Part shown: positions 27,042-49,500 of the stretch, piece by piece
Position numbering within the stretch: position 1 is the stretch's first letter
How the letters are laid out: the number at the start of each line of letters is the position of its first letter
NCBI GenBank assembly: GCA_002269645.1
Contig: NIVC01001377.1
Span: 237,632 to 301,631 of the forward strand
Direction: 5' to 3'
Source: Macrostomum lignano
Taxonomy: Eukaryota
DNA: 64,000 bases
Notes under the pieces: generated by a model
What the model was told of the DNA's origin: nothing
Database searches by the model: none
The model's input: the letters and a program-made list of their open reading frames with translations, nothing else
Position numbers and translations under genes: made by a program

Positions 27042-29998
27042 CTCTGAAATGACGCACTGTTTGCCTAATGCAATGTTTGCTTTTACCCTGGCGGCGGTAC
27101 TCGTCCCCCTCCTCTATTTTCTCTCTCCCCGTCCTTTCTCCCAGACAGCCAAAGAAGGCGCCTGAGTTCTGTTTTCACTAGACAGTGAGCTCACAAATCG
27201 TTCTCGCCCAGACTCAGCTCCGGCGCTCCGGGGCTGCTGCAGGGGTGGGCCTCAAACAGAGTCCGAGTCTCAGGGTTCGCCAGGTCGGCTTAGCGTTCTC
27301 AAGTGCCACGCTTTTTCAGCTGATCCATGATAGTCTCCGAGCTCAAAGCAGTCCCCTCTGCCCTTCCCAATGTACCTTTAATGTCCAAGGCTGAAGGCTC
27401 TTGACGTATTTAGCTTTCACACTCTTCTTAACCTCTCTTTGCATTTCTTGGTCAAGGCTTGCCACCCACTGAGAAAACGGAGCTGCCCATAGCTGCAGTT
27501 GAGTTTCAGAGATCGAACTGTCTTTTAGCGAATTACTTTTGCAAAATTGAAGTCTATTTATTATTCTTTCGTCATGGGAACACCTAAAAATATATGCGCT
27601 CGATTGTCGTCAGCTCAAATTCAGTTTTGATTCATAGCACTCATGACATTGCGAACAGTTACAAAAAGCTTTAATTAACAGACTATGATTCATACAGGAA
27701 CTTTTCCCAAACCATGTTTCGCATGTGGCTACTAATGCAAACAATTTTGGGGTTTCTATTTTTAGCAACAAAGAAATCTGCATGTACCTCACGAGTTCTT
27801 GACATTCATTGCCACAGAAAACTGGCCTAACAAGATATCTACCTGAGCACACTACTCTTTTACTTTGATAGTAGTATTGCGTGTTTACAATCTGTGTTGC
27901 GAAAACAAAACACTTTTTGTTTCGCTTTTTTTACTGTAACTTTTTAATGACCACCGCCCAGGTGTGCGGCAGCTTTGGAACCACCAGCAGCTGTGACTTT
28001 GACCCAGTTGAGGAGATTGGACCTGTCTGTGAGTAGAGCTAATAAAAATTGAATACATTTCAGATTTTTACGTGAGTAAGAAGCCATTTTAGCACAAGAA
28101 ATATATCAACAGAAGATTTTCTAATTGTTATGCAGAGAGACATATTCCTGTAGGTTAATTTTCGTAGAGAGCCTCATCTTATCGATTCCGCGCCATTAAT
28201 CAATTATTTACAGGCATGTCCGAGCGCATCTGGCTCCACATCGACGCTGCGTACGCCGGAGCTTTCCTATTCTGCCCAGAGTACCGACCGCTGATGCGTG
28301 GCATTGAATACGCCGATTCTTTCAACTTCAATCCGCACAAAATGATGCACGTCAACTTTGACTGCTCCGCACTGTTCCTGCGATGCGTGGAAGATTTGTT
28401 CGACGGTTTGAAGGTGAGAGTTTGGACCCTTTAGCTTAGACTTGTAGTTCAACAGGTTGGCGTTAGCCAGGGTTTTTAGTGGCCCAGGGGCTTTAGCACC
28501 AGGGGCTTTAGCACCCGGGTCTTTAGCACTAGGGACGTCAGCACAAGGGTCTTTAGCACCAGGGGCTTTAGCACCAGGGGCTTTAGCACCCGGGTCTTTA
28601 GCACTAGGGACGTCAGCACAAGGGTCTTTAGCACCAGGGGCTTTAGCACCAGGGGCTTTAGCACCAGGGGCTTTAGCACCCGGGTCTTTAGCACTAGGGA
28701 CGTCAGCACAAGGGTCTTTAGCACCATGGGCGCCAGCACCAGGGTCTTTAGCATCATGGGCGCCAGCACCAGTGTCTTTAGCACCACGGGCTTTAGCACA
28801 AAAAGCCCGTTACTTTTACTGGGGTGTGGGATTAGCCATTGCTTTTTCTGAGTATAATCTAGGGGCATTCTTATCAACATAACAGGAGGACCTGCTGTCG
28901 GGGCTAAAGCTGATGAAGATCTTCAAGGAGCAGGGCATCCCAGACTATCGGCACTGGGAAATTCCGCTGGGTCGTCGATTTCGCGCCCTGAAAATCTGGT
29001 TCGTCCTGCGCAGCATGGGCCTGCAGGGCCTTCGCAAGTCACTGCGACATCATGTCCAGATGGCCGACCACTTCGCAGAGAGAATGGGTGCCGACCCCGA
29101 GTTCGAGGTGCTGACCAAGAGTCTCGGCTTGGTGACTTTTCGGGTCAAGGTGAGGCTGAATCAATGCGCTCAGGAATTGAGCTTTGAAAGGTTTTAGCAA
29201 ACATTAGAACTACGCTCATAGAGCATAAATCATATACATTTATGCGCGTCGCAAATCTTCAAATTACTGTAGTCGTAGCAACTGCGAACACAAGTACCAA
29301 TATCTTCCATCCATCTACACGTAATTAGAGCTTTTTTTCAGCACTGAATAGTCACAGTGCCAGGACTACTAAGACTAGATTTACTACTCCTATTAACTAT
29401 AGTGGTCCTTGATCCAACCAACACAGATGAGCATTATAGCGAAAATTCACACGCACGCTTTCAGCTTCCCATCAGACCAGATGGCTCGTCCGCAGGCTCC
29501 GGAGTTTTAGTAAGTGGCGCGTCTAATGCTTACTGAAGAGTAAGTTTTGCTCTCAATTGCACCTCCGTTGGATTAGCATTGGTCTGTGCAATCAGTAAAC
29601 ATGAAAGAGCATGTTCATATCAAACTTGACCTTTTGAGGCTGATCTCAAACTATAGTTGCGATCTGGCTCGACCCAATCCCAGCAATTAAGACTCAACCA
29701 GCCTATTCCACTACTCCAGGACACGGACGCGGTGAACGCTCTGCTGTACAATCTGATCTGCGACGACGGACGAATCCACCTGAATGCGGCCGAGACGGGC
29801 AACCCGCCAACCTACTACCTGCGCTTCGTGTGCACCTCGCACGCCGAACAGAAAGACGTCGATTTCGCCTTCGACGTCATCAAGAGCCTGACAGCCCGTC
29901 TGCGTAGTCGGCGACTGTCGCTCAGCGAGGTGCAGGCCGAGCGTGAGAAGATGCTCAACAATCTGGCCCAGCAGCGCCGCATCACCAGCACCGGTTGA
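24931..29998 (+). CDS. Group II PLP-dependent aromatic L-amino acid decarboxylase (DDC/TDC/HDC family), 7 exons, 580 aa
   Basis: Exons 24931-25350, 25902-26267, 26369-26515, 27962-28028, 28214-28413, 28886-29149, 29720-29998; all GT-AG and phase matched (1743 nt). Motifs: QMVDYVADY, VQPGYL, ITHWNHPNFHAYYP, GFSW, HIDAAYAG, SFNFNPHK (PLP Lys), DYRHWEIPLGRRFRALK, LRF. Confidence 0.95.
25902..26267 (+). CDS. Decarboxylase exon 2
   Basis: CCGCAG|ITHWNHP..YSTDQ|GTAAAA. Confidence 0.95.
26369..26515 (+). CDS. Decarboxylase exon 3
   Basis: TCGCAG|THSMIVRNASFIG..DKAKGRIPFF|GTGAGT. Confidence 0.92.
26992..27038. repeat. (CT)n dinucleotide microsatellite in decarboxylase intron 3
   Basis: Direct inspection. 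Confidence 0.95.
27962..28028 (+). CDS. Decarboxylase exon 4
   Basis: GCCCAG|VCGSFGTTSSCDFDPVEEIGPV|GTGAGT. Confidence 0.92.
28214..28413 (+). CDS. Decarboxylase exon 5 (PLP lysine)
   Basis: TTACAG|..WLHIDAAYAG..NPHK..EDLFDGLK|GTGAGA. Confidence 0.93.
28470..28800. repeat. 15-bp minisatellite (GGGG/TCTTTAGCACCA) with about 75-bp higher-order unit, in decarboxylase intron 5
   Basis: Direct inspection. Confidence 0.92.
28886..29149 (+). CDS. Decarboxylase exon 6
   Basis: TAACAG|EDLLSGLK..DYRHWEIPLGRRFR..TFRVK|GTGAGG. Confidence 0.9.
29720..29998 (+). CDS. Decarboxylase exon 7
   Basis: CTCCAG|DTDAVN..IHL..YYLRFVCT..TSTG* (TGA 29996-29998). Confidence 0.92.
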   Translation, partial: DTDAVNALLYNLICDDGRIHLNAAETGNPPTYYLRFVCTSHAEQKDVDFAFDVIKSLTARLRSRRLSLSEVQAEREKMLNNLAQQRRITSTG

Positions 29999-38131: not shown

Positions 38132-41100
38132 ATCATGGATTGCTCATTTGCGAAATAGCTATGGCCCAACTGTTTGGAAAGTCCCGCTTCAATTACATTG
38201 ATTGGTTGAGTCTATAAATATTACTTTCGTCATGCTAAGTTATAGTTCAACGCGGACAGTTAAAATCCCATCGGATAAAGATAGGTTGGGCCACAGACAG
38301 TACGCCATGATCTAGGTTTGCCTTTCTCTGTCTTTGACAAAAGCAATACTTCTTCCTCCGTTCCAATTTCACTGGTTTTAGTTTGAACGCAATAGAAAAC
38401 TAGCTTACATATACTCGTAAATAATTCCGGAAAAAGTATAAAGACAGTCTCAATTAAATACGATTCGAAAGTTCCAATGGAGTACCTAAAAAGTAAAAAC
38501 TCGCAGTAAAAAATCAATTGGGTGATGAAATCAAAATTTGTTCAGAAATAGCTATATTATTATTTTTTATTCGATTCTAAGAAATCGATTCAGAGAAGCT
38601 TACACAAAGATCTACGATGGCTGAATTTATATTGGATCTATTAAAACAAATAAAAACATTTAAAATAAAGATTTTTTCTGTCAATTCATTTCTTTATAAA
38701 ACGATTAATATGATTATTGTAATAATTGCTTTTCAAATTAGGAATTTATTAATATTATACTCAGGAGGTTTATTCATACAATAAAAATGATTTTTGAAAT
38801 GCTTTAAAAGAGAGTTGGTGCTGAATTAGAATTACTGTAGCATTGCACAATATGATGAGGCAACGTTAAAAAGGTTAAATTATTTTGCACTCTTCCCAGC
38901 TTTTAGAGACCGATCTATTACAAAGAGTAGCTGCCGGCATAATATAGCTTCTAATCCGTCTTTGCGGATAATCTCCCAAAATCTTGATTTGTGAAATATT
39001 CCCTAGAGAGCAATTAAAAAATCAGGCAGTTTCAAGCATCACATGCATAAGTGCAGAAAACCATGCAATCCAAAGGATTGCGCTAGTAGGTCCGTTCTGT
39101 TTCAATTTTTTCCCACCGACTCACAGACATATCCGGCCGTCTTTCACGCCAGACTGAGCTTCCTAGGGCCAATCGGGGGTGTCATAAATCACTGCAGCTG
39201 CGGGCAGCAACTATCGAAGATTCTGGACCAAGAAGTTCTTTAACTAGGACCTGGAATAGCAACTCTCAAACTCTCAACTCTCAAATTCGAAAGATTTACC
39301 AATGAAACTTTTGCAAATAAAATAATTTAAGAAATATTGGAATTTTCAACAAAAAATTTCAATATGGTTAGATTTTTATTACTTTCTCTGGGTTTGTTTA
39401 AACTAGCCCTCAGATTTCAAATCAGACCTAGTTATCACACGAAGTAAATTATAATTTTAACAAAAAAATGAATTTGAAAATTCGGCTGTCTGCCGTGCAA
39501 AATTTAAAGACTGAGGTTAGAGCTCCTACTCCAGATCTGGTTCTAGACCTCCTTGACAGGGTTGATTCCGGTCGAAAGTTTCGAATGCAACGCTGCAATG
39601 GGAAGCTAAGGACTTTATTGGCACAATCGTTTTTCTCCCGTCACAGCTCCAAGCCATGCAGCTATCAGGGTCATCTCTACTGCCGATATCAGGGATCTGC
39701 GGTTTTCTCTGCCTACATGAAATTCTTGCCGAAAAAAGGCTACTGAAGTGCTCGGCTTCCCCGCTCCCTTTTGGCTCCTCAGTCACGCCATCTTTTTTCT
39801 CCCCTCATATCCCAAGTCACAAGTCCACCCCTGCCGACTCTGTGCAAGGACACCCAGAAGCAGATTCTGGAGGAGCAGATCTTCTCCAAATCTCTGTCTG
39901 TGAAAACTATGGGCTAAAGTTAGAAAACGGATATCAAAGCTTACATGCAAATCCAACAGAACCTAAAGACAGATTGGGTCAAATACAACACACAGAAACT
40001 TGACTGAGAGAAGATTTTCTTTACTCCAGGTTCTGGTTTCTGGGTCACCAATCGCGCAACCGCAAGTTCACTATTGGATACGATATTTCTAATCCTCGAG
40101 TTTTCAAACTAGCGCCAAAATGAGGCTTTGACCCGATGACTGTTGCCCGCTCCGGGGAAGGAAAATTTCTCAAACAGCTCAACGAACTTGCCGAGTTAGA
40201 TGGGATTAGGCGGAAAGGATATCTTGAAGCAATTTCTACCAAAATTTAAGAGGTCAATAACGAATTCCCAAAGGGTGATAAAAATTAGAATTTTTCCACA
40301 ACTGCGCTTCCATTAAGAGCGCGCACTTTCAAATATGGACTGCTATAATATTGTATAATATTCTTTAATAAACTATACAGTGCATGCATAGCTTGTAGTT
40401 GTATGCAAATTAGAATTTAACCTTAGCTTTTTTCCCGTAGGCCCTTCTTTTCCGTAGGATGTTCCGCTTACTACGGAAAACGTCTCAGTCTATGGTCAGA
40501 CTTCATATAACAAGGCCTCAAATCGAGTAACGTTAGAATATTCAATACGTCTCGCGTGTATTACAGCAAAAAATACCAATATACTTTCTGCGAATCGGTG
40601 ATTCAGACTTATGCTCAGAAGTGTAATCATTTGAGCATCTTACTCCGTTTTAAAGTCTTAAGGGTTTAACAACATACAATGCACCATAGGCCCAAAAAAG
40701 CACACAACAGTAAACCAATACAGAAATTACACTGTGCACTATTAGGCAGGCAACTAACTCGCAGTTCAACAGCTCGATCTAAAAGCAGAAAATAAACGGA
40801 GACCATTTGGCTGCGAGAGTAAGGCACAGGGAGACTAATATAGTGTGACTGAAACCTGAACAGAGTGGACTGGGTCGGCTTTCCTCTGAGCATTGCCGCC
40901 AGGGCCAATATGTTCGCTCCTATCTTTAGTCTTCTCTCCCATTCTCGATCGAGTTTGACCGGCAAATATTGCCGCGCTGTGTGCCCTCGGCTGGTCAACA
41001 ATCCTGTGCTCGAGCGTTGAAATCTGTACAGTCAAACAAAATTGCGGTCTCTTGCTTGGACGACTAGGAGGCCTACAAGTCTTTTTCCATTCTCTTTACT

Positions 41101-41233
41101 CTTTAAGATTGTTTGTTAAAAATATGACTACAGAATGCGAGATTAGACCACCCAGAAGAGAGGCAGCTGATTTCTTTATTTGACTTGTCCCTCTGGGGTC
41201 AAATTTAGACATGCTGGTCGTGTAGTTCCAATT

Positions 41234-41670
<437 letters not shown>

Positions 41671-41710
41671 CAAGCAAGCAAGCTTATCTCCATCCCTCAG
41701 CGACCTGTCA

Positions 41711-41829
41711 ATGAACGGCCGGAGCTGTCAATCAAGCGGCCCCTGCCAGACAATCAGGCTGTCAGTGGTTGGTATTTGCTGCATTCTGTTCTCCCGCGCC
41801 TCGGCAGAATGCGTAATGAATATAACAAG
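41711..41829 (+). CDS. Channel exon 1 (signal peptide)
   Basis: [39 protein letters not shown]; phase-2 donor GTAAGC matches the exon 2 acceptor. Confidence 0.7.
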
Positions 41830-44800
41830 GTAAGCTAAATCCATTCATTGCTTTGTGTTGTTTAATTTTGCCCATAATGATAATCTTGTGTAAAGTTTTG
41901 ATTAAAGTTTTGTGTAAAGGTTTATATATTGAATATGATAGAAGAACTATCGTGACATTCATTTATCTTAATCCATGCTTACATGACCATTCTCAAGTAA
42001 ACTCACAGACTATGGAAAAAACTGCATGGTTTCTATACTTACTGCACTAAATCGTTCTCATATTCATTGGATTCAAGCAGTTCGCTTTCAGTTTTAAGAT
42101 TTTTGGCAGTAAATAACGACCTACTTGGTAAAATAAGGCTTATAAAGCTACCTAAAAATCGTTTGAAAGGAAATGAGAAAATGCAGACGCGAACTGAGCT
42201 AACACGGAAATTGTTGCGGAATTGGAGTTTGACCAAACAAAGCCGTTCATTTTTTAGCTTTATTGCGGAAACCAAGTACGACAAGCGAAACTCACCGAAT
42301 AAAAGTCAGTTGCTAGCGTGATCTGCTGGATTCTTCTTTGCATGCTCGTTGTAAACTGTTCTCCTTATTTTTTTCTATATTGCGAGCTAGTAGAACTATC
42401 ATCACGCCACTGCTCACATCTTGATCAAGTGCCCTGTAACTGAGTAGAGACTCGCATCAGTGTGAATAAACTCTGGTCCTTTGAAACATCAAAATAGCAA
42501 TTCGGGCCGCTCAAGGTTTGGTTCTTCTCTGCTCCCTAGTCAAATCTCCTCTTAATTCTTGGTTCTCCCATCTCTATTCTCCTCTCCCTCTCTTATCCAG
42601 TTATCCCCCTCTTCTCTCCTCTCTACTTCTCTCCTGTCCTCTCTTTTTTTCTCTATTCTCCTCGCTCCTCTGCTTTCTCAACTCCCTTCTCTCCTCTCCT
42701 TCTCTCCTCTCCTTCTCTCCTCTCCTTCTCTCCTCTCCTTCTCTCCTCTCCTTCTCTCCTCTCCTTCTCTCCTCTCCTTCTCTCCTCTCCTTCTCTCCTC
42801 TCCTTCTCTCCTCTCCTTCTCTCCTCTCCTTCTCTCCTCTCTTTCTCTCCTCTCCCTTCTCTCCTCTCCCTTCTCTCCTCTCTTTCTCTCCTCTCCCTTC
42901 TCTCCTCTCTTTCTCTCCCCTCCCTTCTCTCCTCTTATTTTCCTCTCCCTTCTCTCCTCTTCTTTTCCTCTCCCTTCTCTCCTCTCCTTCTCTCCTCTCC
43001 TTCTCTCCTCTCCTTCTCTCCTCTCCTTCTCTCCTCTCTTTCTCTCCTCTCCCTTCTCTCCTCTTCTTTTCCTCTCCCTTCTCTCCTCTTCTTTTCCTCT
43101 CCCTTCTCTCCTCTCCTTCTCTCCTCTCCTTCTCTCCTCTCCTTCTCTCCTCTCCTTCTCTCCTCTCCTTCTCTCCTCTCCTTCTCTCCTCTCCTTCTCT
43201 CCTCTCCTTCTCTCCTCTCCTTCTCTCCTCTCCTTCTCTCCTCTCCTTCTCTCCTCTCCTTCTCTCCTCTCCTTCTCTCCTCTCCTTCTCTCCTCTCCTT
43301 CTCTCCTCTCCTTCTCTCCTCTCCTTCTCTCCTCTCCCTTCTCTCCTCTCTTTCTCTCCTCTCCCTTCTCTCCTCTTCTTTTCCTCTCCCTTCTCTCCTC
43401 TTATTTTCCTCTCCCTTCTCTTCTCTCCTTCTCTCTTCGCTCCTCTTATTTCCCTTCTCATTACCATTCTCTTCCCTCTCCTCTCTTCTCCTCTATTCCC
43501 TCGTCTCTCTTTCTCCTAACTATCTTATCCCCTCTCTATTCCCACTCCTCACTCTCCCCTCTTCTGGCTGCAGTCAAGCGCTGGGTTCTGTATCTGGACC
43601 TGAGGTAAAACAGTTTGCTGACCCCTGCCATAGACAAAAGTTTTAATGCATTTTTTCTCATTTTCTCAGTCAAAAGTCGACGGCATGCTCAGGCCATAAT
43701 TCAGCATCATAATTTCCTACTGCTCTGTCAGTATGACTGAGTTATTTGTTGCAAAAAAGAGAGCCACCTGCCCGAACGAAAATCTTGTCCTTCTCGTCTT
43801 GACTCGACATTTCTTCTACCAGCTTGCTTCCAATGCGAACTTTAAACCGTAAAGAAAAGGAAGTTGATTTTCGCACCTATTTATGTCTATGGTTCCAATT
43901 AACTGAGCAACTGTTCGGGTGAATGAGAATTTGCTCAAAGTTCCACATAGCTACATCTTTGTTCACACGCTCATACAAAAATCAGAGCAGAAGCATTGAC
44001 CTGTGAGCAATGGTACAACTTTGCTCATACGGCCTGTTTACCACAGTGTCACCTGCTCTTAACAGCAGAAAATTAATTAGTTTTTAGTTTTTATGTATAG
44101 CACTGCACTGTCTAATCGTTGTAAATTTACTTTGCACCCGTAATAACGACCGCACCGGCTTATCGCGTGTTTTATTAGAACTGTACATCTTCTGTCTAAT
44201 TTTGTCTAATAATTATTATTTCAGTTATGAACTCTACAAAAAACTGGTCGACTCAAGCGCTTATAACAAGAGAACGCATCCGAGTTTGAGTGAGACTAAT
44301 TTATTGCAGAGAGAGATAGAGAGAGAGTTCGCATGCCAGATGTTAAATTGAACGTGTTTGAGGTGTTGGATTGGAGATTTGAAGTTTGATATAGGTTCCT
44401 CTGGTCAGGTAGAAAAATTACTAGTTGCAAAAAGACCAAGTCCAGTGCAATCATATAGTCATTTCAAGTAGCAGACTCATTCTGTGTATTACGCTCGTAC
44501 TCTTTATGCCCAGCTGCTCTGTCCAAGTTATATCCATCGTTGTGATTGCGCAACAATGTGGGCTAATATTGGGAAGCGCTCTGATAGGCTAATTTCCACT
44601 TGACCTGGCAATTCTAAAATCTGTAATGATAATTAATTCAATGGCTCTGTTGGTTTTAGGTATTAAGTTTTTTAATGTAGCTTGTAGTATCGGTTCTGGA
44701 CATATGAGGACAAAATTAACGTTTTGATCCGGCTAAAACAAGGCCATATAATTAAATTGTACCATGACCTTTGTGCCCGCTGGGCACTTATTCTTGCCTT

Positions 44801-46401
44801 TTAATGCCATAGACTACATTTAAGCCCGTTTGCAGGACTTTAATGCTTAAAAAACTTACTTTAATGCAAATTAGCGGGCAGTTAAGTATAAGATATTCTA
44901 TGGGTTTGAGGTCGGTATCCGACCGAAAAACCCATAGAATATCTTATTTAAACTACTTTAATTTTGCGGGATGCATTCAGATAAATCCCGCAGCCATACT
45001 TGTATGTCTATGGTTGAATTTGGGGATGGGGGTGTGGGGGCGAAGCCCCACATTCTTACCATAGACAAAATTTCATTAAGAAATTTCTTGAGTCACGAAG
45101 TAAGAGAAGAGAGAAGCTCGCTTATTTGGATACATACAATAATCCTTGCAATATGTCCGGGAAAGTGATCGATTAAATCCCGCGAAATAAAATCTATGTC
45201 AATAACCTCCCTGAAAGTGAGCTTTAAAGTGGTTTTATGACATTTAACGCCCGATTATTCTGTCCCACTAATTGTCCAGGACACAAATGTCTATGGCGCT
45301 GTATGGCCTTGTCCGAGGATTTCGCATTAACGCCCACAAAGCATGGGTATTAATGTACTATTAATTTTCAAAATATACACACATTCGCATAGATATGGTT
45401 CTATGGCCGAAGTCATAACAGCCATTCTGAAGTGGAATTCATTAAATGCATGAAACCAACTTCCGAAATACTCATAAAAATGTCTATATGACTGGCCTGT
45501 ACTCTACTTGTGTAATGATTTTAGCCATAGACAGTGGTTAAGGAACGAATATTTTCCTTTTTGTGATTTGTTGTGTTAATTATCTTTTGGTTTAATTAAA
45601 ACTTCTGGTTTTCGATTTATTATGAGCATAAACTAATGTAAAAGGCTTATTTATGCTTTTATTTTCGTGTTTTCAGCTGGTCCGACCATTATTCTTCTTG
45701 GCATCTACATAAACGGATTCAATTATATTAGCGAGCAATCAATGGTGAGCAACCTCACGGATGTTTAGAATGCTATTTTGGGTAGCCTTGATGCCATTTT
45801 ATAATCTAATAATCATCACGTGCCGGGGTGAGATTGATGCTTCTTTGATTCTACAACTGCTCTCGGGGGTGCTGAAAATAACAGCGTCATATAGGTCCAT
45901 TGTCTGTCCCTAGATACGTAATTAAGTGGGTATATTATATCAGTTTATGAGTTTAGCAGCTCCCTAAATGTAGCTAGCCATTCTGAGTAGCACCACATGT
46001 AACTCTGTACTCATTTCTACGGCTATAGGCAAGCAATAGGACATAGCGACAAAGCGACTATGTATGACATGAAAAATATAATTTCAGAGACAAATATTCA
46101 CGTCTCGCAGTTTTTCTTGTAATGCTTCTGTAAGGCCAGTTTGATTAATAGAGAGAGGAAACATATGCAGAATAAACAGAACTGTAGTACAGACTCGAAT
46201 ATGGACACAGACAGACAGACAGACAGACACACAGACAGACAAGCAGACAGACACTAAGACAGACACTAGGACGGACAGACACACACTAAGACAGACAGAC
46301 AGACACTAAGACGGCAGACAGACAGACAGACACTCTGACGGACAGGCAGACAGACAGACACTAAGACGGCAGACAGACACTAAGACGGCAGACAGACACT
46401 A

Positions 46402-46466
<65 letters not shown>

Positions 46467-46477
46467 CTAAGACACTA

Positions 46478-46509
<32 letters not shown>

Positions 46510-49500
46510 GGACAGACACTAAGACGGATGGACAGGCTGACTTCCGCAATAAAATGATTGCGCCAACACCATCTACCACCCAGGACTACGAGATCAACCT
46601 GTACATGCGGGAGCAGTGGTGGGACCCCCGGTTGGCCTTCAATCGCAGTCACATGTGCGGCATGGAGTTCATGAAGCTGCCGGACCGAGCCTGGGATAAA
46701 ATCTGGGTTCCGGATGTGTTTTTCAGGTTAGTTTGGCATACACTTTTCCGACATGCTGCTACAGCTACTTTCATAATTGTGATTCTTTCTGTAGACATAG
46801 ACGCTCCAGCTCTATAAATGCTCGAGATCTATAGACGCTCCAAATGTATAGACGCCCTACATCTATAGACGCTCCAAATCTATAAACGCCCTACATCTAC
46901 TGTATAGACGCTCAATATCTATAGACGCTCCAGATTTATAGACGCTTTGAATCTATAGACGCTCTAGTTCTATAGACGCTCCAGTTCATGGACGCCGCAC
47001 ATCTATAGACGCTCCAGTTCTATAGACGCTCTAGTCTATAGACGCCCTACATCTATAGACGCTCCATATCTATAGACGCTCTAGTCTATAGGCGCCCTAC
47101 ATCTATAGACGCTCCAGATCTATAGACACTCTAGATCTATAGACGCCCTACATCTATAGACGCTCCAGATCTATAGACGCTTTAAATCTATAGACGCTCC
47201 AGTTCTATAGACGCTCCAGTTCTATAGACGCTCCAGTTCTATAGACGCTTCAGTTCTATAGACGCCGTACATCTATAGACGCTCCAGTTCTATAGACGCT
47301 CCAGTTCTATAGACGCCGTACATCTATAGACGCTCCAGATCTATAGACGCTCCAGATCTATAGACGCTCCATATCGATAGACGCTCCAGTTCTATAGACG
47401 CTCCACATCTATAGACACTCCACATCTATAGACGCTCCATATCGATAGACGCTCCAGTTCTATAGACGCCCCACATCTATAGACGCTCCATATCGATAGA
47501 CGCTCCATATCGATAGACGCTCCATTCCGATATACGCTCCAAATCTATAGACGCTCCACATCTATAGACGCTCCCAGGAGCGTCATATAAATCATATCAC
47601 ATCTATAGACGCTCCACATCTTAAGACAGTTAAGGAAACACCGATTCAAGTTGGCCATTTTACCCTTTTATCGTGTACATTTCAGAAACGAGAAGAAGGC
47701 GACATTTCACGAGGTTACCCTACCAAATCGGCTCATGCGGCTCTACCCGAACGGCACAGTTTACTACGCTGCCAAGTAAAAATTAAAGAGTTTATCTACG
47801 TGTACTTTAGTGCAAATTTGTTCATACAGCAGTGTTTATTCAAATCAACTGACTTCGAAATCTAAACTCTCATGGATTACCAATGACCCATGCAAAATCC
47901 ATTCAAAAGGCCAAGGGCTTCGTATTTTCAAACTGTAGCTTATGATACCATCCAGTTGAAGTCGATGGGTCCCAAATTTAGCTTAACAATCGTCCTTGGC
48001 CTGACCTTTTTTAATCACTGCCAATGCCACACGTGAATGAAATTGCGTGATCGGAGACCAAACTGAAGCCAGGGTCATTGTATTGGTATCTCTGGGGCCA
48101 TAAACCCGTGATTGCTGTAAACAAGCAGGCGCCTCCCTGACTAAGGCACCCAGTTGACGTGAGCGAGAGCGTAGAGCCACGTTTAATAAATACGACAGAT
48201 GCTGCTCACGTCCTTGCTTTGCATCCTTGTTTTTCTCACTTCATCACTCGCGGAAGTTTCGTATTCTTGAATTTCACGCCATCAACAGACTCATCCGCGC
48301 TCACTTTCTGTGCACCGGTTTTATGCACACGTTTAACGCAAAAAACCGAATGGATTGAACTAATTTCGATTGCAGAATCACGGCCACCCTCTCGTGCCAG
48401 ATGAAGCTGCACAAGTATCCCCTGGACACTCAGGTCTGCCCCATCCAGTTTGAGTCGTGTAAGCAGCTTGCGGTGTGTGTGTGACACTTGAGATATCGCG
48501 AGCATCGCGTTGGAGGGGGGGGCGGGGGTTCAGTGGCTGCAGACTCAGGCATATTTGAGTATCTTCTGGGAAAGTTCATTTTCTTATTTATAGCTGAATA
48601 TTTCTTCGGAAAAACAACAAAGTATTTGAGCATACTACTCACTATTAAAATTACTATCACAAGTAGTAAATGTGAAGGAATAGTTCTCAAAAATAATTAG
48701 GCAAATCCACAAGAAATGAACAACCATTAAGCAATGAATTCAATCCATAAAAATCTCGCGATTTGCTCTCCTGCAGTCGGTCACACCGTCAAAGCCAACG
48801 TCTACCAATGGCGGCCGGGTCCAGTTGAAAAGGATGAGCAACTGATTCTGCCGCAGTTTGAACTGCACGCAACTAATACGAAAAACTGTCAGCAAACCTA
48901 CGCTACTGGTAACTGCCTTGAAGTTCTCCTTTGATTTTAGCTTAGTTACAGCGTAGTAGGGCTCTGAACAAATGCAACTTTAGGTTTCTAAACACTAGCA
49001 TAAACTGTGACAATAGTTGTGACCTTAACTCTCCACAGGCGATTACCCATGTCTAGAGGTGGAGTTTGTACTCAGGCGCAACATTGGCTACTACCTCATT
49101 CAGCTGTACGTTCCATCCGTACTGATCGTGATCTTGTCCTGGGTGGCCTTCTGGATCTCCATCGATGCCATACCGGCCCGGGTGACCATCGGTTTGCTTA
49201 CTGTGCTCACCATGACTACTCAGAGCGCGACAGCAAGAGCCAGCCTGCCACGAGTATCTTATATTAAGGTTTGTCTGATGAGCAGCCTCGAACCAAGGCT
49301 ACTCATGTAGAATTTTACGAGGCAGGTATTACCAACAATAAGACATTACAGAGAGAGAAGGTTTTGATTCGGAAAAGCCTGTCTTTCCTAATCTTTTTCA
49401 AAAAAATTACGTATTCCTTCCCGTCTTACTACTTGAATAGTCCCATTGCCTCGAACAAGCATTCTATTGATATTTATAAATAAAGTTCACGGTAAAAAAC

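What the first reader, a model, noticed from the sequence alone, without database searches (positions are those of the whole stretch)
28384..28945. Aromatic amino acid decarboxylase whose catalytic DPxYL loop is replaced by a duplicated Tyr-less motif
Seen: the spliced sequence between the PLP lysine (NPHK) and DYRHW reads LFLRCV-EDLFDGLK|EDLLSGLK-LMKIFKEQGIP and contains no tyrosine. Established: DDC/TDC/HDC carry DP(T/L)YL here, and this Tyr (Tyr332 in mammalian DDC) protonates the intermediate. Its substitution in DDC and in plant aromatic aldehyde synthases shifts the reaction to decarboxylation-dependent oxidative deamination. The His192 equivalent (THSM), Asp271, Asn300/His302/Lys303 and Arg447 equivalents are intact and the frame is unbroken. 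Inference: this could be an independently evolved animal aldehyde synthase (aldehyde + H2O2 + NH3) or a new-specificity enzyme, by a different route from the His-to-Asn change of insect DHPAA synthase.
Basis: partly seen in the sequence, partly recalled or inferred. Interest (0 to 1): 0.8.

Follow-up and report, generated by a model that had tools for sequence, protein, structure and literature searches.

The report
Flatworm DOPA-decarboxylase paralogue lacking catalytic tyrosine
The flatworm Macrostomum lignano has an expressed, strongly conserved extra copy of the enzyme that makes dopamine and serotonin, in which the mobile loop carrying the tyrosine that completes the reaction has been rebuilt without it, so the enzyme probably makes something other than an amine, possibly an aldehyde; this has not been tested.

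Summary
The window is Macrostomum lignano contig NIVC01001377.1. The gene is BOX15_Mlig023106g1: 8 coding exons on the + strand, 24411-29998, 576 aa. It is a DDC-type group II PLP decarboxylase (Pfam PF00282, 400 bits; pig DDC E=6e-142).

The 28413/28886 junction uses the best splice sites available and is the one in the RNA-seq-derived GenBank annotation. The segment between NPHK and DYRHW has no tyrosine. About 200 homologues were checked, and nearly all keep xPxY(L).

All other catalytic residues are intact. The residues just after His192 are also remodelled.

Three subgenome copies of the gene differ at 17 coding sites. All 17 are synonymous, against about 2.8% intron divergence, so the Tyr-less protein is under strong purifying selection.

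No relative above 50% identity exists outside M. lignano among 1.84 billion representative proteins. The intron between the two octapeptide copies sits at a position absent from the canonical M. lignano, Capitella and Lingula DDC genes.

The aldehyde-synthase reading is plausible but untested. Two results caution against it: P330L cripples human AADC, and Y332F lowers activity in insect DHPAA synthase. More degenerate Tyr-less AADC-like paralogues also occur in other invertebrates.

Verdict: a new variant of a known kind, of moderate interest.

The parts
24411..24428 (+). First coding mini-exon (MYSKMK) of BOX15_Mlig023106g1
   Evidence: ATGTATTCCAAGATGAAG|gtaagt. It matches the N-terminus of P0405. 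The gene range 24411-29998 equals L004 1501-7088.
24961..25350 (+). Exon with a low-complexity N-terminal extension, followed by the start of the conserved decarboxylase (MDTATF at 25150) up to IMPG
   Evidence: The intron position IMPG|ITHW is shared with Capitella and Lingula.
25902..26267 (+). Exon encoding ITHW...YSTDQ: substrate-pocket residues W71, Y79, Y80, S82, V101, F103 and the phosphate-binding GTATES
26369..26515 (+). Exon starting THSMIVRN: the His192 equivalent (codon 26372-26374) and the remodelled small loop (S194M, V195I, E196V, A198N)
27962..28028 (+). Exon encoding VCGSFGTTSSCDFDPVEEIGPV (Thr246 equivalent)
28214..28413 (+). Exon 5: Asp271 (HIDAAY), NFNPHK with the PLP lysine (28339-28341), the anchoring helix, and octapeptide copy 1, EDLFDGLK (28390-28413)
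28414..28885 (+). Intron 5 (GTGAGA...ACAG), at a position not found in the canonical M. lignano, Capitella or Lingula DDC genes. It is 472 nt here and 279 nt in the other two copies.
28484..28799 (.). Minisatellite inside intron 5: 15-nt unit CCAGGGGCTTTAGCA, about 21 copies, with a 75-nt higher-order period. It occurs nowhere else in the window.
28886..29149 (+). Exon 6: octapeptide copy 2, EDLLSGLK (28886-28909); LMKIFKEQGIP (28910-28942); DYRHW (28943-28957); then PLGRRF and onward to FRVK
29720..29998 (+). Last exon (DTDAVN...LRF with the Arg447 equivalent...ITSTG, stop TGA)

Best explanation
Shown:
- The locus is one of three subgenome copies of a Macrostomum lignano DDC-type aromatic amino acid decarboxylase paralogue.
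- It is transcribed and has an intact reading frame.
- It keeps every PLP-binding and substrate-anchoring residue.
- Its mobile catalytic loop has been rebuilt. The conserved V-D-P-x-Y-L-K-H is replaced by a second, diverged copy of the preceding octapeptide (EDLLSGLK) plus LMKIFKEQ. The loop has no Tyr and no Pro hinge and is 4 residues longer than in invertebrate DDCs.
- The protein is under strong purifying selection.

Inferred mechanism:
- The enzyme still binds PLP, forms the external aldimine with an aromatic L-amino acid and releases CO2.
- It lacks the acid that protonates C-alpha of the quinonoid, so it does not release amine efficiently.
- The most likely fate of the carbanion is attack on O2. 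That is decarboxylation-dependent oxidative deamination, giving an aromatic acetaldehyde and NH3, with or without H2O2, as in DDC Y332F and plant aldehyde synthases.

The stated confidence refers to this inferred chemistry. The anatomy itself is close to certain.
For: Family membership and intact catalytic residues:
- Pfam PF00282 scores 399.9 bits over the full profile.
- Pig DDC E=5.9e-142, human AADC 4.4e-141, Drosophila DDC 9.8e-141.
- W71, Y79, F103, H192, S193, T246, D271, N300, H302, K303, D345, R347, L353, G354, R355 and R447 are all conserved.

Tyr-less loop. All alignments place a non-acid residue at Tyr332: Lys by HMMER and Leu by MAFFT.

Junction:
- Strong GTGAGA donor and CAG acceptor.
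- The three GenBank models g1, g2 and g3 come from an annotation built only from RNA-seq and transcripts, and all carry the same loop.

Selection:
- 17 variable coding sites among the three copies are all synonymous, with 0 nonsynonymous changes (356 synonymous and 1165 nonsynonymous sites).
- Introns differ by 2.8% plus indels.
- Under neutrality the chance of 17/17 synonymous is about 0.234^17, roughly 2e-11.

Remodelling around the loop: S194M, V195I, E196V and A198N fall at columns that are at least 92% conserved. Glu196 bonds loop residue 330 in DHPAA synthase.

Chemistry precedent:
- Y332F DDC makes DHPAA and NH3 and no amine (PMC7497351).
- In plant enzymes, Tyr-to-Phe impairs C-alpha protonation, so O2 attack gives aldehyde, NH3 and H2O2.
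Against: - There are no activity data of any kind.
- The change is much larger than Tyr-to-Phe. The Pro330 hinge is lost, and P330L in human AADC leaves 0.15-0.5% of catalytic efficiency. Overall turnover, including decarboxylation, may therefore be very low.
- In Drosophila DHPAA synthase, Tyr332 helps hold O2, and Y332F reduces aldehyde and H2O2.
- The protein deviates at 32 of 168 highly conserved columns, twice the next most deviant homologue. These include the invariant Ser149 (now Thr) and Cys111 (now Ala).
- AlphaFold gives the new loop pLDDT below 50, so its position is unknown.
- Selection is shown for the whole protein, not for the loop. The loop has 33 codons and one synonymous change. 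Absence of nonsynonymous change there is not significant on its own (expected about 2).
- No orthologue from another species is available.
Confidence: 0.4

Rival explanations
1. It is a catalytically crippled paralogue kept for a non-catalytic or very slow role. Possibilities include a PLP or amino-acid binding protein, a regulatory or dominant-negative partner of the canonical DDC, or an enzyme that inactivates itself by abortive transamination to PMP.
For: - Loss of both the Tyr and the Pro hinge. P330L alone leaves under 1% of efficiency.
- The largest number of deviations at conserved columns in the family sample: 32/168.
- The longest branch in the sample.
- Anaerobic Y332F DDC converts PLP to PMP at once.
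- Other invertebrates carry Tyr-less AADC-like paralogues that have also lost further catalytic residues. C. elegans hdl-1 is uncharacterised.
Against: Unlike those degenerate paralogues, this one keeps every PLP-binding and carboxylate/aromatic-pocket residue. It shows 0 nonsynonymous changes in three copies. That level of constraint is more easily explained by a working active site.
Confidence: 0.25
2. It is still an amine-forming decarboxylase. The proton would come from another donor (His192, water, or a loop Lys), or the Tyr would be supplied in trans by the loop of the canonical DDC in a heterodimer. Substrate preference might have changed (T82S, A83L, I101V).
For: [quoted passage not shown] A heterodimer with the canonical paralogue (P0022/P0410, which has ADPIYLKH) would therefore give this protein's active site a Tyr.
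- His192 and Ser193 are retained.
- Gly354 is of the DDC type.
Against: - Identity to the canonical paralogue is only 49%.
- pH studies argue that the small-loop His is not the direct acid.
- No group II decarboxylase in the roughly 200 sequences sampled dispenses with the Tyr apart from aldehyde-synthase-like Y-to-F forms and degenerate paralogues.
Confidence: 0.25
3. It is a splicing or annotation artefact, and the real mRNA has a different loop: either a single octapeptide through an alternative donor or acceptor, or an unannotated exon.
For: - I could not inspect RNA-seq reads.
- Two alternative in-frame junctions exist (donor at 28390, acceptor at 28909).
- An older UniProt model, P0004, joins exon 5 to a different point.
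Against: - The annotated sites are the only consensus-like ones.
- Three transcript-derived models and an independent model (P0002) agree.
- P0004 is frame-shifted through exon 6 relative to the window, which suggests indels in its source sequence (not verified).
- No Tyr-loop coding potential exists in any frame of the window, and the intron has stops in all frames.
- Either alternative junction still gives a Tyr-less loop.
Confidence: 0.05

Closest known systems
Animal DOPA decarboxylase / AADC (EC 4.1.1.28; PDB 1JS3, 3RBF, 3K40)
   Same: - Same fold and family.
- 47-51% identity over the whole length.
- All PLP and substrate-anchoring residues are the same, and Gly354 is of the DDC type.
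- Five of the six core intron positions are shared with lophotrochozoan DDC genes.
   Different: - The catalytic loop lacks Pro330 and Tyr332 and is 4 residues longer.
- The small loop after His192 is remodelled.
- Substitutions at invariant Cys111 and Ser149.
- A new intron lies inside the loop-coding region, and three neighbouring ancestral introns are absent.
Plant aromatic acetaldehyde synthases (PAAS, 4HPAAS, AtAAS; PDB 6EEI, 6EEQ)
   Same: The loop Tyr is absent while the small-loop His and the rest of the site are kept. This is the configuration that diverts the quinonoid to O2.
   Different: - Plants have a point change, Tyr to Phe, in an otherwise conserved loop. Here the whole motif is replaced.
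- Whether Phe340 (LMKIF; Phe409 in the 576-aa protein) sits at the Tyr position depends on the alignment.
- The match to the plant enzymes is weaker (E 1e-93 to 1e-114), and the lineage is separate.
Insect DHPAA synthase (alpha-methyldopa-resistant protein; PDB 6JRL)
   Same: An animal DDC paralogue that makes aldehyde instead of amine. It matches this protein at E=3e-134.
   Different: - The insect enzyme has Asn192 and keeps Tyr332, which it needs for activity, together with Arg330.
- This protein has His192, no Tyr, and Leu at position 330.
- DHPAA synthase is reported as confined to insects.
Engineered or pathogenic AADC loop variants Y332F and P330L
   Same: They alter the same two loop positions that are lost here.
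   Different: - They are single substitutions in a mammalian background.
- Y332F gives an oxidative deaminase.
- P330L gives a 194- to 674-fold loss of efficiency.
Divergent Tyr-less AADC-like paralogues of other invertebrates: a Caenorhabditis brenneri protein (possibly hdl-1-like), Lottia XP_009051405, Aplysia XP_012936593, Pollicipes XP_037094159, and M. lignano Mlig019317
   Same: Family members without a Tyr in the aligned loop. All are functionally uncharacterised.
   Different: - They are only 30-41% identical to this protein and to one another, so they are not orthologues.
- They have also lost other catalytic or pocket residues: H302S; W71L and F103A; D271E, N300S and T246I. This protein has lost none of these.

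Membership tests
Group II PLP-dependent decarboxylases (Pfam PF00282, fold type I) | Full-length match to the family profile above the curated cut-off | tested here: met
   399.9 bits against a cut-off of 27, profile positions 1-375 of 375. AlphaFold model has mean pLDDT 85.9 and pTM 0.81.
Group II PLP-dependent decarboxylases (Pfam PF00282, fold type I) | Schiff-base lysine in N-x-H-K, Asp that pairs with the pyridine N, and His stacking on PLP | tested here: met
   NFNPHK (Lys303 equivalent), HIDAAY (Asp271) and DQTHS (His192), in columns invariant across 76 homologues (His/Asn for position 192).
Amine-forming aromatic L-amino acid decarboxylase (DDC/AADC, EC 4.1.1.28) | Catalytic Tyr (Tyr332) in the mobile loop, within xDPxYLKH | tested here: not met
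   No Tyr between NPHK and DYRHW. The motif is present in every other full-length hit in which the loop anchors were found.
Amine-forming aromatic L-amino acid decarboxylase (DDC/AADC, EC 4.1.1.28) | Pro330 hinge that positions the loop | tested here: not met
   The aligned residue is Leu (EDL against VDP). The column is 93% Pro, with Arg in the remainder.
Amine-forming aromatic L-amino acid decarboxylase (DDC/AADC, EC 4.1.1.28) | Aromatic pocket and carboxylate anchors (W71, Y79, F103, T246, R447), and Gly354 rather than the Ser of HDC | tested here: met
   All are present. T82S, A83L and I101V are conservative deviations.
Amine-forming aromatic L-amino acid decarboxylase (DDC/AADC, EC 4.1.1.28) | Produces aromatic amine and CO2 | not testable with these tools
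   Needs an enzyme assay.
Plant-type aromatic acetaldehyde synthase | Phe (or another non-acid residue) at the loop Tyr position, with His retained | tested here: inconclusive
   The Tyr is absent and His is retained. However, the loop is replaced rather than point-mutated, and the residue aligned to Tyr is Lys, Leu or Phe depending on the alignment.
Plant-type aromatic acetaldehyde synthase | O2-dependent formation of aldehyde, NH3 and H2O2 from the amino acid | not testable with these tools
   Needs an enzyme assay.
Insect DHPAA synthase | Asn at position 192, with Tyr332 and Arg330 retained | tested here: not met
   This protein has His at 192, no Tyr, and Leu at 330. The features are as described in PMC13651850.

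The most novel reading that the evidence does not exclude
This would be the first non-insect animal aromatic aldehyde synthase. It would have arisen in a flatworm by replacement of the whole catalytic lid, rather than by a Tyr-to-Phe or His-to-Asn point change, and that replacement would be linked to the gain of a new intron at the repeat junction. It might supply a reactive catechol or phenol aldehyde, or H2O2, for cross-linking or signalling.
Probability: 0.3. Interest if true: 0.7.

Novelty: new variant of a known kind. Interest (0 to 1): 0.5.

Why it matters
The loop tyrosine is the switch that decides whether this enzyme family makes neurotransmitter amines or reactive aldehydes. Natural switches are known in plants (Tyr to Phe) and insects (His to Asn).

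This gene would be a third, structurally different route in an animal. The rest of the active site is untouched and there is clear evidence of selection, so it is a clean natural experiment on what the loop does.

M. lignano is a laboratory model with RNAi and transgenesis, so both the chemistry and the biology can be tested directly.

The locus also offers a case study of a paralogue-specific intron lying exactly between two copies of a duplicated coding motif.

Tried and rejected
Searches for orthologues:
- The full-length word-indexed search, a search with exons 5-6 only to catch fragments, and exhaustive HMMER over 1.84 billion representatives found nothing above 50-56% identity outside M. 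lignano.
- Conservation of the loop across species therefore could not be tested.

Expression data:
- The gene identifier is absent from full texts.
- It is also absent from the supplements of two M. lignano transcriptome papers.

Origin of the paralogue:
- In a neighbour-joining tree this protein is simply the longest branch.
- Counts of rare residues shared with the canonical M. lignano DDC are no higher than with unrelated species.
- Whether the duplication is flatworm-specific is unresolved.

Other points:
- Exact look-up of P0022 failed. Cluster member P0410 was used instead.
- Hidden exon: rejected.
- Pseudogene: rejected.
- I first read the 'g2' suffix as gene order within an operon. 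It is a copy number within a 95% identity cluster.
- The AlphaFold monomer cannot place the loop (pLDDT below 50). I therefore drew no structural conclusion about which residue reaches C-alpha.
Full report
**Identity of the locus.** A protein probe located seven conserved exons of an aromatic amino acid decarboxylase on the + strand between 25150 and 29998.
- All exons have GT-AG borders, and together they give an open frame of 507 codons.
- The translation is 100% identical to a GenBank protein of the flatworm Macrostomum lignano.
- The window is identical to contig NIVC01001377.1 of assembly GCA_002269645.1. The gene is BOX15_Mlig023106g1 (P0405, 576 aa).
- Two further N-terminal coding pieces lie at 24411-24428 and 24961-25149.
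- Pfam PF00282 matches over its whole length at 400 bits.
- The best solved relatives are pig and human DDC (E about 1e-141 to 1e-142), Drosophila DDC (about 1e-140) and insect DHPAA synthase (3e-134). Histidine decarboxylase and the plant enzymes score lower.

**The observation.** Exon 5 ends ...NPHKMMHVNFDCSALFLRCVEDLFDGLK at 28413, followed by gtgaga. Exon 6 starts at 28886 after acag and reads EDLLSGLKLMKIFKEQGIPDYRHW.
- There is no tyrosine between the PLP lysine and DYRHW.
- In the 120 best full-length homologues, every protein in which both anchors could be found, apart from this gene's own models, has (D/N/E/H)(P/R)xYL there.
- The lysine-to-DYRHW spacing is 39 residues in most invertebrates and 41 in vertebrates, against 43 here.
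- A second set of 120 fragments adds one Y-to-F protein and one other Tyr-less loop.
- The two adjacent octapeptides share 6 of 8 residues. This occurs in 0.04% of shuffles of the protein, and the corresponding octamers of homologues share 0-2 residues.
- At the DNA level the two copies share only 13 of 24 bases, and five of the six conserved codons differ at synonymous positions (my reading of the two sequences). If this was a duplication, it is old.
- Alignments disagree on what sits at the Tyr332 position. HMMER puts Lys there with a 3-residue insertion. MAFFT aligns EDLL to VDPL, treats SGLK as an insertion and aligns LMKI to YLKH. Anchoring from the C-terminal side puts Phe there. None of these gives a Tyr.

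**Is the junction real?**
- The donor (AAG|GTGAGA) and acceptor (ACAG|G) resemble the other sites of the gene, all of whose acceptors are CAG.
- The two alternative in-frame junctions use GTGGAA or an AAG acceptor. They would only remove one octapeptide and would not restore a Tyr.
- The GenBank annotation of this assembly was built exclusively from RNA-seq and assembled transcripts, using StringTie, TACO, TBONE and TransDecoder (PMC5730564).
- Its models for all three copies of the gene carry the same loop. So does an independent model from the older assembly (P0002).
- P0004 joins exon 5 elsewhere, but its translation is frame-shifted through exon 6 relative to the window, which suggests indels in its source sequence.
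- Intron 5 has stops in all frames, and no DPxYL-like peptide is encoded anywhere in the 64 kb.
- I did not see the reads themselves.

**Selection.** The assembly holds three copies: g1 (this window), g2 (L001) and g3 (L005). This fits the three subgenomes described for this neopolyploid, in which paralogous loci differ by about 2.2% overall and 1.1% in coding sequence (PMC10733133).
- Introns of g1 and g2 differ by 2.8% in substitutions plus many indels.
- Across the 1521-nt core coding sequence the three copies differ at 17 sites, and all 17 are synonymous.
- With 356 synonymous and 1165 nonsynonymous sites, the chance of this under neutrality is about 2e-11.
- The protein, Tyr-less loop included, is therefore maintained by purifying selection. 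It is not a decaying duplicate.
- The loop alone (33 codons, one synonymous difference) is too short for a separate test.
- Copy g3 has a 1-nt deletion in a C run in exon 1. This is either an assembly error or a very recent lesion.

**What else has changed.** Every residue known to hold PLP or the substrate is present. Even so, the protein deviates at 32 of 168 columns that are at least 90% conserved. The next most deviant homologue has 17, and the canonical M. lignano DDC has 10. The changes include:
- the Pro hinge of the loop;
- four residues just after His192 (S194M, V195I, E196V, A198N);
- the invariant Ser149 (now Thr) and Cys111 (now Ala).

The loop and the His192 small loop work together across the dimer interface. 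Glu196 bonds loop residue 330 in DHPAA synthase. The pattern therefore looks like coordinated remodelling of the lid and its docking site. AlphaFold models the core confidently (pLDDT 85.9), but residues 399-408 of the new loop fall below 50. The model cannot say how the lid closes.

**Gene structure.**
- Five of the six introns in the conserved core lie where Capitella and/or Lingula DDC genes have introns.
- In those two genes the loop is encoded within a single uninterrupted exon, bounded downstream by DYR|HW. The canonical M. lignano DDC gene (Mlig011750g2) shows the same arrangement.
- The window gene lacks the flanking introns (GIE|YAD, DYR|HW, IRK|HV). It has instead a unique intron exactly between the two octapeptide copies.
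- That intron is mostly a 15-nt minisatellite. It is 472 nt here and 279 nt in the other two copies.
- The coincidence of a paralogue-specific intron with the repeat junction suggests that one event produced both. I cannot reconstruct that event.

**How it most likely works.** The established chemistry is as follows.
- After CO2 loss, the quinonoid is protonated at C-alpha by the loop Tyr, helped by the small-loop His.
- Y332F DDC makes DHPAA and NH3 and no amine, and anaerobically it converts PLP to PMP.
- Plant enzymes with Phe at this site are aldehyde synthases.

By inference, a homodimer of this protein should bind PLP and substrate and decarboxylate, but not release amine efficiently. 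Oxidative deamination to an aromatic aldehyde is the most likely outcome (confidence about 0.4).

Cautions:
- P330L alone leaves under 1% of human AADC efficiency.
- Y332F lowers output in Drosophila DHPAA synthase.
- The lid acts in trans, so a heterodimer with the canonical DDC could supply a Tyr.

Rivals are a crippled or regulatory paralogue (0.25), a still amine-forming enzyme (0.25) and an annotation artefact (0.05).

**Comparison with what is known.** This is a member of the group II decarboxylase family and of its DDC-like branch. It fails the defining loop features of an amine-forming AADC. It is not an insect-type DHPAA synthase, because it has His rather than Asn at position 192. 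It is at most analogous to plant aldehyde synthases.

No relative above 50% identity exists outside M. lignano in 1.84 billion representative proteins. Tyr-less AADC-like paralogues do occur in a second M. lignano gene, Lottia, Aplysia, a barnacle and Caenorhabditis. C. elegans hdl-1 remains uncharacterised. Those proteins are 30-41% identical to this one and have lost further catalytic residues. This protein is therefore the cleanest case rather than the only one.

**Verdict.**
- Novelty: a new variant of a known kind.
- Interest: about 0.5. The case is a sharp, cheaply testable hypothesis in a tractable model animal. It rests on one species and has no biochemistry behind it.

Noticed in passing
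window 24411-29998; L001 3001-8337; L005 3001-7602: The gene exists in three about 97%-identical genomic copies (Mlig023106 g1, g2, g3), matching the three subgenomes of this neopolyploid. Copy g3 has a 1-nt deletion in a C run in exon 1 (codon 31 counted from MDTATF), and its annotated protein therefore starts at MEDVESK.
   Followed up: yes
window 28414-28885: Intron 5 lies at a position absent from the canonical M. lignano, Capitella and Lingula DDC genes, exactly between the two octapeptide copies. It is mostly a 15-nt minisatellite and differs in length between copies (472 against 279 nt). Three ancestral introns nearby are missing from this paralogue. This may be a linked intron gain and duplication; the mechanism is unexplained.
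   Followed up: partly
window 26372-26395: The small loop after the His192 equivalent reads THSMIVRN instead of the near-invariant AHSSVERA. Ser194, Val195, Glu196 and Ala198 are all changed.
   Followed up: partly
not in window (P0268; BOX15_Mlig019317g1/g2): M. lignano has a second, unrelated Tyr-less AADC-like paralogue, 38% identical to this one and with His302 changed to Ser. Lottia, Aplysia, Pollicipes and Caenorhabditis brenneri also have Tyr-less family members.
   Followed up: partly
window 16731-17248 (+): A PLAC8-like (PF04749) coding sequence lies about 7 kb upstream. One UniProt model (P0005) fuses it to the N-terminus of the decarboxylase.
   Followed up: no
window 39816-47776 (+): Exons of a protein whose sequence looks like the N-terminal ligand-binding domain of a Cys-loop ligand-gated ion channel (my reading; no domain search was run) lie downstream. 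UniProt model A0A1I8IP91 (P0407) fuses them to the C-terminus of the decarboxylase.
   Followed up: no
window 5878-23293, 35266-62488: The window is packed with long micro- and minisatellite arrays. Examples are (TATC)n at 12546-14072, a 19-mer repeated 83 times at 9531-11137, (TAGA)n at 18541-19242 and a 28-mer repeated 28 times at 22500-23293. These arrays explain the extreme GC and AT skews in the composition profile.
   Followed up: no
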